The translations under genes were made by a program, and so were the position numbers. The notes under the pieces were generated by a model that did not search any database, was not told the origin of the DNA, and saw nothing but the letters and a program-made list of their open reading frames with translations. A stretch of DNA of 63,805 nt, the filler included, from Reticulomyxa filosa (taxonomy: Eukaryota; Protista; Foraminifera): NCBI GenBank assembly GCA_000512085.1. It is 16 parts of 16 records of this genome, joined end to end, with 100 filler letters (N's around TTAATTAATTAA, not from the genome) between each part and the next. Parts side by side here need not be neighbours in the genome. Positions count along the whole stretch, not along the records: positions 35,008 to 36,949 come from ASPP01008457.1; 15 more parts are not named here. One strand, written 5' to 3'. This document shows positions 35,008 to 37,116 of the stretch, piece after piece. How positions within the stretch are numbered: position 1 is the first letter of the stretch; every line of letters starts with the position of its first letter.

Positions 35008-35372
35008 CACCGGGACAAGCGGGGCGGCCTGTCGCTTCACGTGAAGAAGGAGCCAAAAGCGCCGACGTGGACCTTCCGCCGGCGGTCGCCCGCCTGATGC
35101 TCGATCTCCTGGAGGCCATCGGCCAGGGCCAGGCGGTCACGCTCGTGCCGTCCGGCGCGGATCTCTCCACCCAGCAGGCCGCCGACATGCTCGACGTCTC
35201 CCGGCCCTTCCTCGTGAAGCTGCTCGAGACCCGGGAGATCCCGCACCACAAGATCGGCACCCATCGCCGCATCCGGGCGGAAGACCTCTTGGCCTACAGG
35301 GACCGTCGCGACAGAACGCGCACCGCCGCGCGCACCCGCCTCGCCCGGCTGGGACAGGAGATCGAGGACTGA
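35008..35372 (+). CDS. Excisionase-family (HTH_17) DNA-binding protein, 5'-truncated
   Basis: VDLPPAVARLMLDLLEAIGQGQAVTLVP..ADLSTQQAADMLDVSRPFLVKLLETREIPHHKIGTHRRIRAEDLLAYR. GC-rich codon usage. Confidence 0.92.
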
Positions 35373-35537
35373 AGGAGGTGTGTCTGGGATCGCTTCACCG
35401 CTTCGCCCGGTTCGATCTTACCAGAAGGTGACGGTCATCCGGCTGAAAGCATTGTGGTCGGCATACGAGGATTGGCCGTTACGCGCGCAAGTCCGACGGG
35501 TCCATCGGCAAACGCATTCACATAAAGGTCTGTCCAG

Positions 35538-36257
35538 ATGTCGCACTCTGCAGGCAACACGCGCGCTGAAGACTTGCGACGGTTTTACGCTGCGCTTTCG
35601 ACGCTGCAGCAGAAGTCGGGTGGGCCACGGACGCTAGAATCATGCTCTGGGCGAATGGAGTGGCCTCGACGCGGCGTATATTTCTTTTGCGAGCCCGGCG
35701 AAGACCGAAGTGACAGCGGCAACGGCCTGAGAGTGGTGCGTGTCGGCACGCATGCGCTGAAGGATCGTAGCAAGACCGTGCTTTGGAATCGCCTCTCACA
35801 ACATCGAGGCCAGTCCGGAAGCCGAAGCGGCAATCATCGCGGGTCGATCTTTCGGTTGATCGTCGGCCAATCCCTTATTGCACGACACGGATACGAGTAT
35901 CCGATGTGGGGCGTGGGCAGTAACGCTCCGAAGGATACTCGCGTGAGCGAAATTCCACTGGAGTGCGAGGTGAGCCGCGTGATTGGCCTGATGCCGTTCC
36001 TCTGGCTCGGAATTGACGACGAAGCAGGTCCGACCAGCGTACGCGGCGTCATCGAACGCAATTCAATCGCGCTCTTGAGTAATTTGGGAAAGGAACCGCT
36101 CGACGCCCCCTCCTCGAATTGGCTTGGCCATCACTGCAACCGACCTCGGGTTCGCGGCTCGGGACTCTGGAACAACAATCACGTCGAGGAAACGTACGAT
36201 CCCAGCTTCTTGAACGTACTTGAGATGTTGGTGGATCAAACGAAGTGCGCACGATGA
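35538..36257 (+). CDS. Putative GIY-YIG-superfamily nuclease (239 aa)
   Basis: RGVYFF (GIY-like), VRVGT (YIG-like), RLSQH (Arg helix), IERNSIALL (Glu) and LWN (Asn) occur in the canonical order, with an extra GNHRGSIFR block. Confidence 0.7.
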   Translation: MSHSAGNTRAEDLRRFYAALSTLQQKSGGPRTLESCSGRMEWPRRGVYFFCEPGEDRSDSGNGLRVVRVGTHALKDRSKTVLWNRLSQHRGQSGSRSGNHRGSIFRLIVGQSLIARHGYEYPMWGVGSNAPKDTRVSEIPLECEVSRVIGLMPFLWLGIDDEAGPTSVRGVIERNSIALLSNLGKEPLDAPSSNWLGHHCNRPRVRGSGLWNNNHVEETYDPSFLNVLEMLVDQTKCAR

Positions 36258-36907
36258 TCGTCGTCATCCAATGCGCAGGAACAAAGCGCAAGCATGCTGG
36301 CCATCTGCAAACGCGCGATGGCAAATCTGTCCTGTTTGTAGCTGATCCGGCAGCAGCGCAGGGATCCAACACCTCAATTTATGCTCGTCCAGATGATCCG
36401 TCAGACCGAGTCATCAGCTGGAGGGATTACCTCATGCAATACAACGAAACACCGTGGAACAACCCGTTCGGACTTCTTCCGGCATATGAGCTTTACGAAA
36501 GAGAGATTTATCGGACGCTCGCCAATCGGATCGGTATCGACAAGACCTTCATTCTCTCTGCTGGGTGGGGAATGATACCAGCTTCATTCCTGACGCCCTC
36601 GTACGACATCACTTTCTCCCCACGTGCAGATCCTTCGAAGCGTAGGAAAAAGCACGAGACATGGGCCGACTTTTCGATGCTTCCAGCTGACACGAATGAA
36701 CCGATCATGTTCCTCGGCGGAAAGGACTACCTGCCTTTCTTTTTGCGGCTGACGGCACATGTCTCCTCACTCCGGACCGTATTCTACAATTCCGTAAATG
36801 CGCCCGACGCTCCAGATTGCCGTCTTGTTCGCTTCGAAACGAAGACGAGGACGAACTGGCATTACGAGTGTGCCAGCAAGCTAGCGAGCGGTCAGGTTGG
36901 CCCGTAG
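36254..36907 (+). CDS. DUF6884/YaaA-like alpha/beta protein (217 aa)
   Basis: IVVIQCAGTK, PAYELY, FILSAGWGMI, TPSYDITF and FLGGKDY follow the C-x-x-x-K / A-x-x-L-Y / ILSAxxG / YD pattern of DUF6884 and YaaA (DUF328). The start overlaps the upstream stop (ATGA). Confidence 0.7.
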   Translation: MIVVIQCAGTKRKHAGHLQTRDGKSVLFVADPAAAQGSNTSIYARPDDPSDRVISWRDYLMQYNETPWNNPFGLLPAYELYEREIYRTLANRIGIDKTFILSAGWGMIPASFLTPSYDITFSPRADPSKRRKKHETWADFSMLPADTNEPIMFLGGKDYLPFFLRLTAHVSSLRTVFYNSVNAPDAPDCRLVRFETKTRTNWHYECASKLASGQVGP

Positions 36908-37116
36908 CAGAGCGGGTTGCCTTCAACGGCTTTCAACCGCCCTCCCCCTNNNNNNNNNNNNNNNNNNNNNNNNNNNNNNNNNNNNNNNNNNNNTTAATTA
37001 ATTAANNNNNNNNNNNNNNNNNNNNNNNNNNNNNNNNNNNNNNNNNNNNTAAAAAAAAAAAAAAAAAAAAAATATGCAAAGAAATAATCAAATGAATAAA
37101 TACATAAAATAAAAAG

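What the first reader, a model, noticed from the sequence alone, without database searches (positions are those of the whole stretch)
35538..36907. Translationally coupled GIY-YIG-like nuclease + DUF6884/YaaA-like pair: candidate uncharacterised anti-phage / modified-DNA restriction module
Seen: two intact ORFs overlapping by ATGA at 36254-36257, directly behind an excisionase-type HTH gene on a GC-rich bacterial contig. ORF1 has GVY...RVG...RLxQH...E...N in GIY-YIG order plus an extra GNHRGSIFR block. ORF2 has the C-x3-K / AxxLY / ILSAxxG / YD pattern shared by DUF6884 and the DNA-binding YaaA family. Known: GIY-YIG domains serve as effectors in several restriction and defence systems, and excisionase-HTH genes mark integrative islands. 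Inference: a two-component system in which the YaaA-like protein senses unusual or modified DNA and the nuclease cleaves it, or a nuclease/immunity pair. I know of no functional description of this pairing.
Basis: partly seen in the sequence, partly recalled or inferred. Interest (0 to 1): 0.8.

Follow-up and report, generated by a model that had tools for sequence, protein, structure and literature searches.

The report
GIY-YIG nuclease with YaaA-like partner
Two overlapping genes encode a GIY-YIG-type DNA nuclease and a YaaA/DUF6884-like DNA-base-binding protein; the pair travels between distant microbes as one unit, is already listed (untested) as phage-defence candidate PDC-M57, and its function has never been measured.

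Summary
ORF1 (35538-36257) and ORF2 (36254-36907) are intact, overlap by ATGA and evolve under purifying selection.

- **ORF1** is a GIY-YIG-fold protein. It matches PADLOC PDC-M57B at E 5e-81. Its near-identical relatives carry Pfam PF26468 (GIY_YIG_3).
- **ORF2** has the YaaA fold and keeps both DUF6884 motifs (CxxxK, LSAxxG). It scores below Pfam's cut-off and only weakly against PDC-M57A.
- **Linkage.** In 72 of 80 related loci from many phyla, the nuclease sits beside, or is fused to, a YaaA/DUF6884/DpdC-superfamily domain. Partner subtype, gene order and fusion state vary. No third gene is conserved.
- **Naming.** The pair is a divergent, reversed-order variant of PDC-M57, an untested "guilt-by-embedding" candidate of Payne et al. 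2024. It is therefore catalogued but not characterised.
- **Most likely mechanism (inferred).** The YaaA-like protein reads or flips a particular DNA base and licenses the nuclease to cut, as in a modification-dependent restriction enzyme.
- **Nuclease/immunity reading disfavoured.** The partner has been lost at least eight separate times while the nuclease stayed intact.
- **Context.** Defence-island context is sporadic, so the defence role remains unproven.

The parts
35008..35372 (+). 3' part of an HTH_17 / excisionase-family DNA-binding gene (context, not part of the module). It is cut by the left edge of the piece; the full gene is 150 aa in relatives.
   Evidence: Pfam HTH_17 E 1.5e-13 and TIGR01764 'excise' E 2e-13. 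The 150-aa orthologue sits upstream of the pair in L081-L088 and L093. It is absent from the other 79 related loci.
35373..35537 (+). Intergenic spacer upstream of ORF1. It probably holds the promoter, but none was recognised.
   Evidence: No sigma-70-like site and no intrinsic terminator anywhere in the piece. This spacer is the least conserved stretch between the window and L001, with indels.
35538..36257 (+). ORF1, 239 aa: GIY-YIG-fold nuclease of Pfam family GIY_YIG_3 (PF26468), which is PADLOC PDC-M57B. Candidate catalytic residues are Y48, R85 and E173. Further invariant residues include R65, R68, H72, Q88, H89, R101, S103, R106, E142 and R169.
   Evidence: PADLOC PDLC04714 E 4.9e-81 over the full length. 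AlphaFold2 model pLDDT 91.7 with strand-strand-helix-helix ... strand-helix order. Best PDB matches: T4 EndoII Z 5.4, UvrC N-terminal domain Z 5.2, I-TevI Z 4.5, PD-T4-3 Z 4.1, Eco29kI Z 4.0. Atlas TM 0.92 to a PF26468 cluster. All 120 best homologues carry PF26468.1.
36254..36257 (+). ATGA overlap of the ORF1 stop and the ORF2 start (translational coupling).
   Evidence: Read directly from the sequence. The same offset of -3 recurs in many related loci.
36254..36907 (+). ORF2, 217 aa: YaaA-fold protein of the DUF6884/YaaA/DpdC superfamily. It is a long subfamily that keeps the CxxxK (C7, K11) and LSAxxG (S102, G106) motifs.
   Evidence: Pfam DUF6884 E 1.2e-5, 25.9 bits (cut-off 30). PADLOC PDC-M57A E 1e-5 and DpdC E 1e-4. 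Model pLDDT 95. Best PDB match is E. coli YaaA 5caj: Foldseek prob 0.99 and VIA Z 7.2 over 162 residues, next best 5.4. About half of its close homologues are annotated PF21818.4.

Best explanation
The two genes form a self-contained, horizontally mobile cassette. It is a divergent, reversed-order variant of the PADLOC candidate defence system PDC-M57.

ORF1 is a GIY-YIG nuclease of family GIY_YIG_3. ORF2 is a YaaA-fold protein of the DUF6884/YaaA/DpdC superfamily. The one biochemically characterised DUF6884-domain protein, DpdC, chemically converts a modified base inside double-stranded DNA.

Proposed working. ORF2 binds DNA and recognises one particular base, probably by flipping it into the pocket lined by C7, K11 and S102. 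That base would be modified or otherwise non-canonical. Recognition recruits or licenses ORF1, which nicks or cleaves the DNA nearby. The result would be a two-part, modification-dependent (type IV-like) restriction activity against invading DNA.

Shown here: the folds, the family assignments, conserved linkage and fusion, mobility, and purifying selection. Inferred: DNA-base recognition by ORF2, nuclease activity of ORF1, dependence of ORF1 on ORF2, and the anti-phage role.
For: 1. ORF1 matches PDC-M57B at E 4.9e-81. It has a GIY-YIG fold with invariant Y48, R85 and E173.
2. ORF2 has the YaaA fold and both DUF6884 motifs (motifs as defined in PMC11701544).
3. In 72 of 80 related loci the nuclease has a YaaA/DUF6884/DpdC-superfamily domain next to it on the same strand.
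   - 35 loci: the window's long type, downstream.
   - 23 loci: a short canonical DUF6884 (PDC-M57A; 169 bits, E 1e-43), upstream.
   - 11 loci: other YaaA- or DpdC-like forms, downstream. One is a DpdC-like protein with DUF7662 (DpdC E 6.5e-26).
   - 4 loci: in-frame fusions in both orders.
4. The ESM Atlas holds whole clusters of fused DUF6884+GIY_YIG_3 proteins (447 and 54 members).
5. No third gene is conserved.
6. Partner type clusters on the nuclease tree (12 changes against about 30 when shuffled), and phyla are interleaved on that tree. A swappable reader on a constant effector is what one expects of a sensor-effector defence module.
7. The partner was lost in 8 separate places while the nuclease stayed intact. 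So the nuclease alone is tolerated, which fits a nuclease that needs its partner.
8. DpdC carries DUF6884 and converts preQ0-DNA to ADG-DNA in vitro (PMC10164549, PMC12235509).
9. PDC-M57 was nominated because the cassette occurs embedded in BREX, DISARM or type I RM systems.
10. Individual contexts are defence or mobile islands.
    - Methylocella silvestris BL2: next to a type III RM and a ubiquitin-like (Multi_ubiq/E2/ThiF-JAB/BubE) system.
    - Afipia: on an element with a relaxase and ArdC.
    - The window's own lineage: among phage-like genes (DUF5131, Sf6_terminase-like).
    - GC falls from 0.69 to 0.51 across the piece.
Against: - No experiment exists for any member. PDC-M57 is explicitly untested.
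- The two nearest genes on each side in 30 diverse loci are mostly housekeeping. Defence or mobility genes appear only sporadically: AbiE, DruA, MADS components, PD-T4-6, PDC-S01, one N6_Mtase. I ran no background control.
- The GIY-YIG structural matches are modest (Z 4-5.4). Foldseek against the PDB found nothing for ORF1. The second motif is RVG rather than YIG.
- ORF2 is below Pfam's cut-off for DUF6884 and only weakly like PDC-M57A.
- Nothing here shows that ORF2 recognises a modified rather than a damaged or ordinary base.
- The interaction test gave no verdict.
Confidence: 0.5

Rival explanations
1. An accessory DNA-repair or lesion-processing module. The DUF6884-like protein recognises a damaged site (abasic site, ribonucleotide or adduct). 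The GIY-YIG nuclease then incises next to it, as UvrC does in excision repair.
For: The B. subtilis DUF6884 protein YfjM was enriched on abasic-site and RNA-base DNA baits (PMC10220248; discussed in PMC11701544). YaaA is a DNA-binding protein of the oxidative-stress response. UvrC's N-terminal domain is among the best structural matches of ORF1 (Z 5.2). Most neighbours in 30 loci are housekeeping genes.
Against: The distribution is patchy, horizontally transferred and frequently lost. GC is lower than in the flanks. The cassette occurs on mobile elements and beside RM systems and embedded in BREX, DISARM or type I RM systems. The partner subfamily is swapped repeatedly, which is unusual for a repair pathway.
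Confidence: 0.2
2. A selfish or element-serving cassette. Either it is a free-standing GIY-YIG homing-type endonuclease with a separate DNA-targeting subunit that spreads by cutting empty sites, or it is a gene pair that helps conjugative or integrative elements establish themselves (anti-defence).
For: GIY-YIG domains are classic homing endonucleases, and I-TevI is among the matches (Z 4.5). The cassette is a solitary insert in very different neighbourhoods and phyla. An ArdC-type anti-restriction gene lies within about 3 kb in Afipia, Methylocella and Haloarcula.
Against: ArdC, relaxase and ParB_N homologues are absent from the 80 surveyed loci at E 1e-4. There is no match in 50,697 phage genomes, where free-standing homing endonucleases abound. 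I saw no conserved insertion target.
Confidence: 0.12
3. A restriction-modification-like or toxin/immunity pair. ORF2 chemically alters host DNA bases, as DpdC does, or neutralises ORF1. This protects the host from a nuclease that cuts unprotected DNA.
For: The one characterised DUF6884-domain protein, DpdC, is a DNA-base-modifying enzyme of an RM system. The putative catalytic Cys and Lys are conserved in ORF2. The genes are tightly coupled.
Against: The partner was lost at least 8 separate times while the nuclease kept all invariant residues. One example is a clean deletion in the window's sister lineage, seen in 22 contigs. That would be lethal for an R-without-M or toxin-without-antitoxin state. 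In-frame fusions occur in both orders. There are no linked preQ0 or dpdA/dpdB genes; QueC appeared once in 120 neighbours.
Confidence: 0.08

Closest known systems
PADLOC phage defence candidate PDC-M57 (Payne et al. 2024, bioRxiv 10.1101/2024.01.29.577857; cassette CAS_00183, FAM_03160>>FAM_00294)
   Same: ORF1 matches the B component over its full length (E 4.9e-81). The partner belongs to the same superfamily as the A component. It is a two-gene, same-strand, overlapping cassette with no further conserved gene.
   Different: The canonical A component is a protein of about 140 aa encoded upstream of B (144 bits in relatives). Here the partner is a 217-aa subfamily encoded downstream, and it scores only 23.9 bits against PDC-M57A. 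PDC-M57 itself has never been tested, so membership gives no function.
DpdC of the Dpd 7-deazaguanine restriction-modification system
   Same: DpdC carries the DUF6884 domain and acts on a base within dsDNA (preQ0 to ADG). ORF2 shares the LSAxxG region with DpdC profiles. One relative of the cassette (L075) pairs the nuclease with a clearly DpdC-like protein (E 6.5e-26).
   Different: The window's ORF2 matches DpdC over only about 37 residues (E 1e-4) and is about 100 aa shorter. No dpdA/dpdB or preQ0-synthesis genes are linked. The Dpd restriction genes are helicases and PLD-type proteins, not a GIY-YIG nuclease.
E. coli YaaA (DUF328, PDB 5caj) and B. subtilis YfjM (DUF6884)
   Same: ORF2 shares the 'cantaloupe' alpha/beta fold (Z 7.2, Foldseek prob 0.99). 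It also shares equivalent motifs: an N-terminal strand followed by a Lys, AxxxY, and (I/L)LSAxxG. These are DNA-binding proteins.
   Different: YaaA and YfjM are stand-alone proteins tied to oxidative stress or lesion binding, and I found no report of a nuclease partner for either. ORF2 gives no hit to the YaaA Pfam model.
Modification-dependent GIY-YIG restriction enzymes such as PD-T4-3 (PDB 9u75, 5hmC-specific), and other GIY-YIG nucleases (T4 EndoII, R.Eco29kI, UvrC, I-TevI)
   Same: ORF1 shares the GIY-YIG core fold, with the Tyr, Arg and Glu in the expected order. The proposed logic is also the same: a base-reading module directs a GIY-YIG cutter.
   Different: Structural similarity is only modest (Z 4-5.4) and there is no detectable sequence similarity. 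ORF1 has RVG in place of YIG, an extra invariant GNHRGSIFR loop, and N- and C-terminal helical additions.

Membership tests
GIY-YIG nuclease superfamily | Core fold: a two-strand hairpin carrying the two motifs, followed by helices, a third strand and a helix. | tested here: met
   The model (pLDDT 91.7) has strands 46-56 and 64-71, helices 82-90 and 104-117, strand 153-158 and helix 168-180. Five of the six best chains among 48,161 PDB representatives are GIY-YIG nucleases, Z 4.0-5.4. The Z values are modest.
GIY-YIG nuclease superfamily | First motif (GIY) with a catalytic Tyr. | tested here: met
   G46-V-Y48; G46 and Y48 are invariant in 62 homologues.
GIY-YIG nuclease superfamily | Second motif (YIG) with a Tyr. 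| tested here: not met
   The equivalent is R68-V-G70. An invariant Arg replaces the Tyr, and the hairpin is longer than the canonical 9-11 residues.
GIY-YIG nuclease superfamily | Conserved Arg in the first helix and a metal-binding Glu in the helix after the third strand. | tested here: inconclusive
   R85 and E173 are invariant and lie in the expected elements. I could not make a residue-level superposition on a solved GIY-YIG active site.
Pfam PF26468 GIY_YIG_3 | A match to the family model. | tested here: inconclusive
   The Pfam copy I could scan gave no hit for ORF1; it may predate PF26468. Indirect evidence is strong. Homologues up to 94% identical, and all 120 listed, carry PF26468.1 precomputed. 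The model matches a cluster that is 100% PF26468 at TM 0.92.
PADLOC PDC-M57 | B component. | tested here: met
   PDLC04714 E 4.9e-81, residues 9-236 on profile positions 3-235 of 238.
PADLOC PDC-M57 | A component adjacent, in the order A then B. | tested here: inconclusive
   ORF2 hits PDC-M57A at only E 1e-5 (23.9 bits), against 116-144 bits for canonical partners in relatives. The order here is B then A. Whether PADLOC's own system rules would call this locus was not run.
Pfam PF21818 DUF6884 | A score above the gathering threshold, plus the CxxxK and LSAxxG motifs. | tested here: inconclusive
   25.9 bits against a cut-off of 30 with model version 3. Both motifs are present and conserved. 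About half of the close homologues are annotated PF21818.4.
YaaA / DUF328 (PF03883) | A match to the family model, and the YaaA fold. | tested here: not met
   The fold is shared (5caj, Z 7.2; Foldseek prob 0.99). There is no PF03883 hit for the window's ORF2. Some partners in relatives do reach it (L078, 38.8 bits). So ORF2 is a relative at superfamily level, not a member.
Dpd system (DpdC) | A full-length DpdC match with linked dpdA/dpdB. | tested here: not met
   Only residues 98-134 match, at E 1e-4. No TGT-like or DndB-like genes were seen in the Pfam-annotated gene lists of the window's relatives.
Toxin-antitoxin or nuclease-immunity pair | The protective partner is indispensable while the toxin is intact. 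| tested here: not met
   There are eight separate partner-less loci whose nuclease keeps all invariant residues (six keep an uninterrupted frame). One is the sister lineage of the window.

The most novel reading that the evidence does not exclude
YaaA/DUF6884-fold proteins are a previously unrecognised class of DNA-base readers. They recognise hypermodified or non-canonical bases (for example 7-deazaguanines, given the kinship with DpdC) and hand the DNA to a dedicated GIY-YIG nuclease. The many partner subtypes (short DUF6884, the window's long form, YaaA-like, DpdC-like+DUF7662, fusions) would then be readers of different specificity on one constant cutter. That would be a modular type IV-like restriction family, and it would also give the first mechanistic handle on the YaaA superfamily.
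Probability: 0.25. Interest if true: 0.75.

Novelty: new variant of a known kind. Interest (0 to 1): 0.5.

Why it matters
The YaaA/DUF328/DUF6884 superfamily is widespread, yet I found a demonstrated catalytic activity for only one member (DpdC). A nuclease that is almost always married or fused to members of this superfamily, with the partner subtype swapped repeatedly, argues strongly that these proteins do something specific on DNA that a cut must follow. Testing this cassette could turn an untested database candidate (PDC-M57) into a defined system. It could also reveal a new kind of base reader useful for detecting DNA modifications, and help explain YaaA and YfjM. If instead it proves to be a repair or selfish element, that would correct a defence-database entry now used in many surveys.

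Tried and rejected
- **Sequence searches of the PDB** with single proteins and with profiles found nothing meaningful for either protein.
- **Foldseek** against the PDB and against viral models found nothing for ORF1. Only VIA-align and the ESM Atlas showed the fold.
- **NCBIfam and PHROGs** gave nothing for ORF1.
- **Complex prediction** on ORF1+ORF2 returned "no answer" (score 0.00; the alignments were not used). This is neither for nor against binding.
- **The look-up of encoding contigs** has no record of the exact window proteins.
- **tblastn of ORF1 against 50,697 phage genomes** gave no match. The "viruses" label on one fused Atlas cluster is therefore not backed by isolated phages.
- **A conserved third component** was looked for and not found.
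- **The HTH_17 gene as part of the system** was rejected. It is linked only in Reyranella relatives.
- **A general link to ArdC, relaxase or ParB_N** was rejected for the 80 loci, although ArdC lies nearby in three other contexts.
- **Promoters and terminators:** none recognised.
- **Literature:** no paper mentions PDC-M57 or GIY_YIG_3 by name in its main text.
- **Not done:** a background control for defence-gene density, so no enrichment statistic is claimed.
Full report
**What is in the piece.** Only 35008-36949 is genome. It holds three + strand genes.
- The 3' part of an HTH_17/excisionase-family gene ends at 35372. Scores are Pfam E 1.5e-13 and TIGR01764 E 2e-13. The left edge cuts it; relatives encode 150 aa.
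- ORF1 runs 35538-36257 (239 aa).
- ORF2 runs 36254-36907 (217 aa).

The ORF1 stop and the ORF2 start overlap as ATGA. This layout recurs in many related loci. No sigma-70 promoter or intrinsic terminator was recognised. GC falls from 0.69 over the HTH gene to 0.51 over ORF2, which hints at foreign origin. Both ORFs are under purifying selection, with dN/dS 0.12-0.21 against relatives 84-93% identical.

**ORF1.**
- Pfam (the copy I could scan), NCBIfam, PHROGs and sequence searches of the PDB gave nothing.
- PADLOC gave a full-length match to PDC-M57B, E 4.9e-81.
- A word-based search found 6051 homologues at E<=1e-5. All 120 listed carry Pfam PF26468.1 (GIY_YIG_3), and UniRef calls one of them a GIY-YIG domain-containing protein.
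- An AlphaFold2 model from 62 homologues is confident (pLDDT 91.7). Its elements are strands 46-56 and 64-71, helices 82-90 and 104-117, strand 153-158 and helix 168-180.
- Foldseek against the PDB found only noise.
- VIA-align 2 against 48,161 representative chains put GIY-YIG folds at the top. They are T4 EndoII (Z 5.4), the UvrC N-terminal domain (5.2), a plant glutaredoxin N-terminal domain (4.9; to my knowledge also GIY-YIG-like), I-TevI (4.5), the 5hmC-specific PD-T4-3 (4.1) and R.Eco29kI (4.0). Slx1 and Hpy188I come lower.
- The Z values are modest, but the list is coherent and falls to unrelated helical proteins below it.
- The ESM Atlas gave TM 0.92 to a cluster that is 100% PF26468.

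Invariant Y48 (GVY), R85 (RLSQH) and E173 (IERN) sit where the catalytic Tyr, Arg and Glu of GIY-YIG enzymes sit. The second motif is RVG, not YIG. The family also has an extra invariant GNHRGSIFR loop. I could not superpose active sites residue by residue.

**ORF2.**
- Pfam DUF6884 scores 25.9 bits, below the 30-bit cut-off.
- PADLOC gives PDC-M57A at E 1e-5 and several DpdC profiles at about E 1e-4, over the ILSAGWG region.
- The model (pLDDT 95) has E. coli YaaA (5caj) as its best PDB match. Foldseek gives prob 0.99. VIA-align gives Z 7.2 over 162 residues, and the next best match is 5.4.
- C7-x3-K11 and I-L-S102-A-G-W-G106 match the two motifs by which Pfam's curators define DUF6884. They relate the family to YaaA and model YfjM flipping a base into that pocket (PMC11701544).
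- About half of ORF2's close homologues are annotated PF21818.4.

So ORF2 is a long, divergent subfamily at the edge of DUF6884.

**Are the two genes linked?** Yes, strongly.
- A scan of one genome per species returned 80 loci with ORF1 homologues (49-91% identity). They come from Alpha- and Gammaproteobacteria, Chloroflexota, Nitrospirota, Nitrospinota, Acidobacteriota, Gemmatimonadota, Planctomycetota, Spirochaetota, Synergistota and a Thermoplasmata archaeon.
- I built a profile from ORF2 relatives and searched all six frames within 3 kb. A superfamily domain turned up in 72 of 80 loci, almost always adjacent and on the same strand.

| Layout of the partner | Loci |
|---|---|
| The window's long type, directly downstream | 35 |
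| Short protein of about 140 aa, upstream and overlapping the nuclease start | 23 |
| Other, longer forms, downstream | 11 |
| In-frame fusions | 4 |
| Long type upstream (L062) | 1 |
| Long type convergent, opposite strand (L006) | 1 |
| None found | 8 |

- Three loci (L045, L053, L073) carry partners on both sides and are counted in two rows, so the rows add up to 83.
- The short upstream partner is a bona fide DUF6884 (about 169 bits) and PDC-M57A (E about 1e-43).
- The longer downstream forms include weakly YaaA-like proteins, one of them also with a weak winged-helix match. In the archaeal locus L075 the partner is a clearly DpdC-like protein with a C-terminal DUF7662 (DpdC E 6.5e-26).
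- The fusions occur in both orders: DUF6884-GIY_YIG_3 in L029, L057 and L074, and GIY_YIG_3-YaaA in L078 (PF03883 at 38.8 bits, above its cut-off).
- The ESM Atlas independently holds clusters of fused DUF6884+GIY_YIG_3 proteins (447 members) and DUF6884+DUF7662+GIY_YIG_3 proteins (54 members).
- All-against-all clustering of 915 neighbouring ORFs found no third conserved gene.
- On a tree of the nuclease, partner type is clustered (12 changes against about 30 after shuffling). Relatedness alone can produce some clustering of this kind. Phyla are interleaved, which indicates horizontal transfer.

**Loss of the partner.**
- The eight partner-less loci are scattered singly inside partnered clades.
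- The clearest case is the window's sister lineage, an uncultured Reyranella (L001 and L085-L088, 22 contigs). There homology stops after about 17 codons of ORF2 and resumes at the neighbouring gene, yet ORF1 keeps every invariant residue.
- So a nuclease without its partner is tolerated. This argues against a toxin/immunity or R-without-M relationship. It fits a nuclease that is inactive or harmless without its partner.

**Is it already named?**
- PDC-M57 is one of 145 "phage defence candidates" that Payne et al. derived from genes embedded in BREX, DISARM or type I RM systems. The authors state that the candidates are untested (bioRxiv 10.1101/2024.01.29.577857).
- It is listed there as cassette CAS_00183, FAM_03160>>FAM_00294, with the number 46 beside it.
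- No paper in the library names PDC-M57 or GIY_YIG_3 in its main text.
- Other PDCs have been tested, with mixed results.
The window carries a variant: reversed order and a divergent long partner.

**Context.**
- Close relatives of the window are Reyranella-like. There the cassette lies in a small variable island: DUF5131 (phage Gp37/Gp68-like), HTH_17, ORF1, ORF2, and a convergent Sf6_terminase-like gene. Housekeeping genes flank the island.
- Afipia massiliensis carries it on an element with ArdC, a ParB_N protein, NikA, a relaxase and a resolvase.
- In Methylocella silvestris BL2 it sits beside a type III RM, a Multi_ubiq/E2/ThiF-JAB/BubE system and ArdC.
- Haloarchaeal megaplasmids carry the nuclease next to an ArdC-like gene and an HNH gene.
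- The two nearest genes on each side in 30 diverse loci are mostly metabolic or transport genes. Defence or mobility genes appear only sporadically: AbiEi/AbiEii, DruA, MADS components, PD-T4-6, PDC-S01, one N6_Mtase, transposases, TraI.
- ArdC, relaxase and ParB_N are absent from those 80 loci.
- No isolated phage genome encodes it.
- I ran no background control, so I claim no enrichment. The cassette behaves as a mostly solitary mobile insert. [quoted passage not shown]

**Mechanism.**
- Shown: a GIY-YIG-fold protein with the expected conserved residues, and a YaaA-fold protein with a conserved Cys/Lys/Ser pocket.
- Also shown: near-obligate linkage with natural fusions, partner swapping, horizontal mobility, and tolerance of partner loss.
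- From the literature: DpdC, which carries DUF6884 (PMC12235509), converts preQ0-DNA to ADG-DNA without other proteins (PMC10164549). YfjM is pulled down on abasic-site and ribonucleotide baits (PMC10220248).
- Inferred: ORF2 recognises a specific non-canonical base in DNA and licenses ORF1 to cut, giving a two-part modification-dependent restriction activity. I give this 0.5.

The rivals are as follows.
- A mobile lesion-repair module: 0.2.
- A selfish homing-type or element-serving cassette: 0.12.
- An RM-like or immunity pair: 0.08.

The predicted-complex test gave no verdict and is not used.

**Verdict.** The cassette is a new variant of a catalogued but uncharacterised candidate system. 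The most useful result here is the conserved marriage, with repeated partner swapping and fusion, between GIY_YIG_3 nucleases and the whole YaaA/DUF6884/DpdC superfamily. Interest is moderate (0.5). It would be higher if the partner proves to be a new class of modified-base reader.

Noticed in passing
window 35008-35372; L081:6917-7369: The HTH_17/excisionase-family gene is cut by the left edge of the piece. The 101-aa GTG-start ORF listed by the tool is not the real gene: relatives encode 150 aa. Its linkage to the cassette holds only in Reyranella-like relatives.
   Followed up: partly
L001:10690-11650 (also L085-L088): In the window's sister lineage, ORF2 is deleted after about codon 17. 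ORF1 then abuts a convergent Sf6_terminase-like gene (136 aa) and stays intact (91% identical).
   Followed up: yes
L093:7733-13856: The island around the cassette holds phage-like genes: DUF5131 (Gp37/Gp68-like) and two separate Sf6_terminase-like small genes. Its content varies between strains; a 794-aa Ser/Thr kinase gene replaces DUF5131 in L085. It may be a decayed prophage or a gene-transfer-agent-like remnant.
   Followed up: no
L095:1-13000 (Methylocella silvestris BL2, CP001280.1): The cassette lies in a clear defence or ICE island. Its neighbours are a type III RM (N6_N4_Mtase, ResIII/RE_endonuc), a ubiquitin-like conjugation system (Multi_ubiq, Prok-E2_E, ThiF/JAB, BubE) and an ArdC homologue.
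   Followed up: no
L075:6587-7738 (Thermoplasmata archaeon MAG): Here the nuclease's partner is a 384-aa DpdC-like protein (E 6.5e-26) with a C-terminal DUF7662. This matches the DUF6884/DUF7662/GIY-YIG fused cluster in the ESM Atlas. The ORF1 homologue in this locus contains one in-frame stop.
   Followed up: partly
L073:9486-11929; L062:7426-9980; L022:9170-11694: Some loci carry extra copies. L073 has two tandem nuclease genes flanked by DUF6884 genes on both sides. L062 has up to three DUF6884-like stretches upstream, some of them fragments. L022 has long-type partners on both sides.
   Followed up: no
L092:7925-10563 (Haloarcula hispanica pHH126) and L041:10717-11709: An HNH endonuclease gene lies directly next to the GIY_YIG_3 gene in haloarchaeal plasmids and in one gammaproteobacterial MAG. 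In pHH126 an ArdC-like gene is directly upstream and a CRISPR-Cas I-B locus lies about 7 kb away.
   Followed up: no
L013:10001-10681, L019:3048-3785: Two further bacterial homologues of ORF1 carry one in-frame stop each. They may be pseudogenes or sequencing errors in MAGs.
   Followed up: no
record titles: Many carriers appear to be marine, partly sponge-associated, MAGs (Poriferihabitaceae, Dehalococcoidia, Nitrospinales, Azotimanducaceae, bins named RHO2/RHO3/GM). This may reflect the sampling of the collection or a real habitat bias of the cassette.
   Followed up: no
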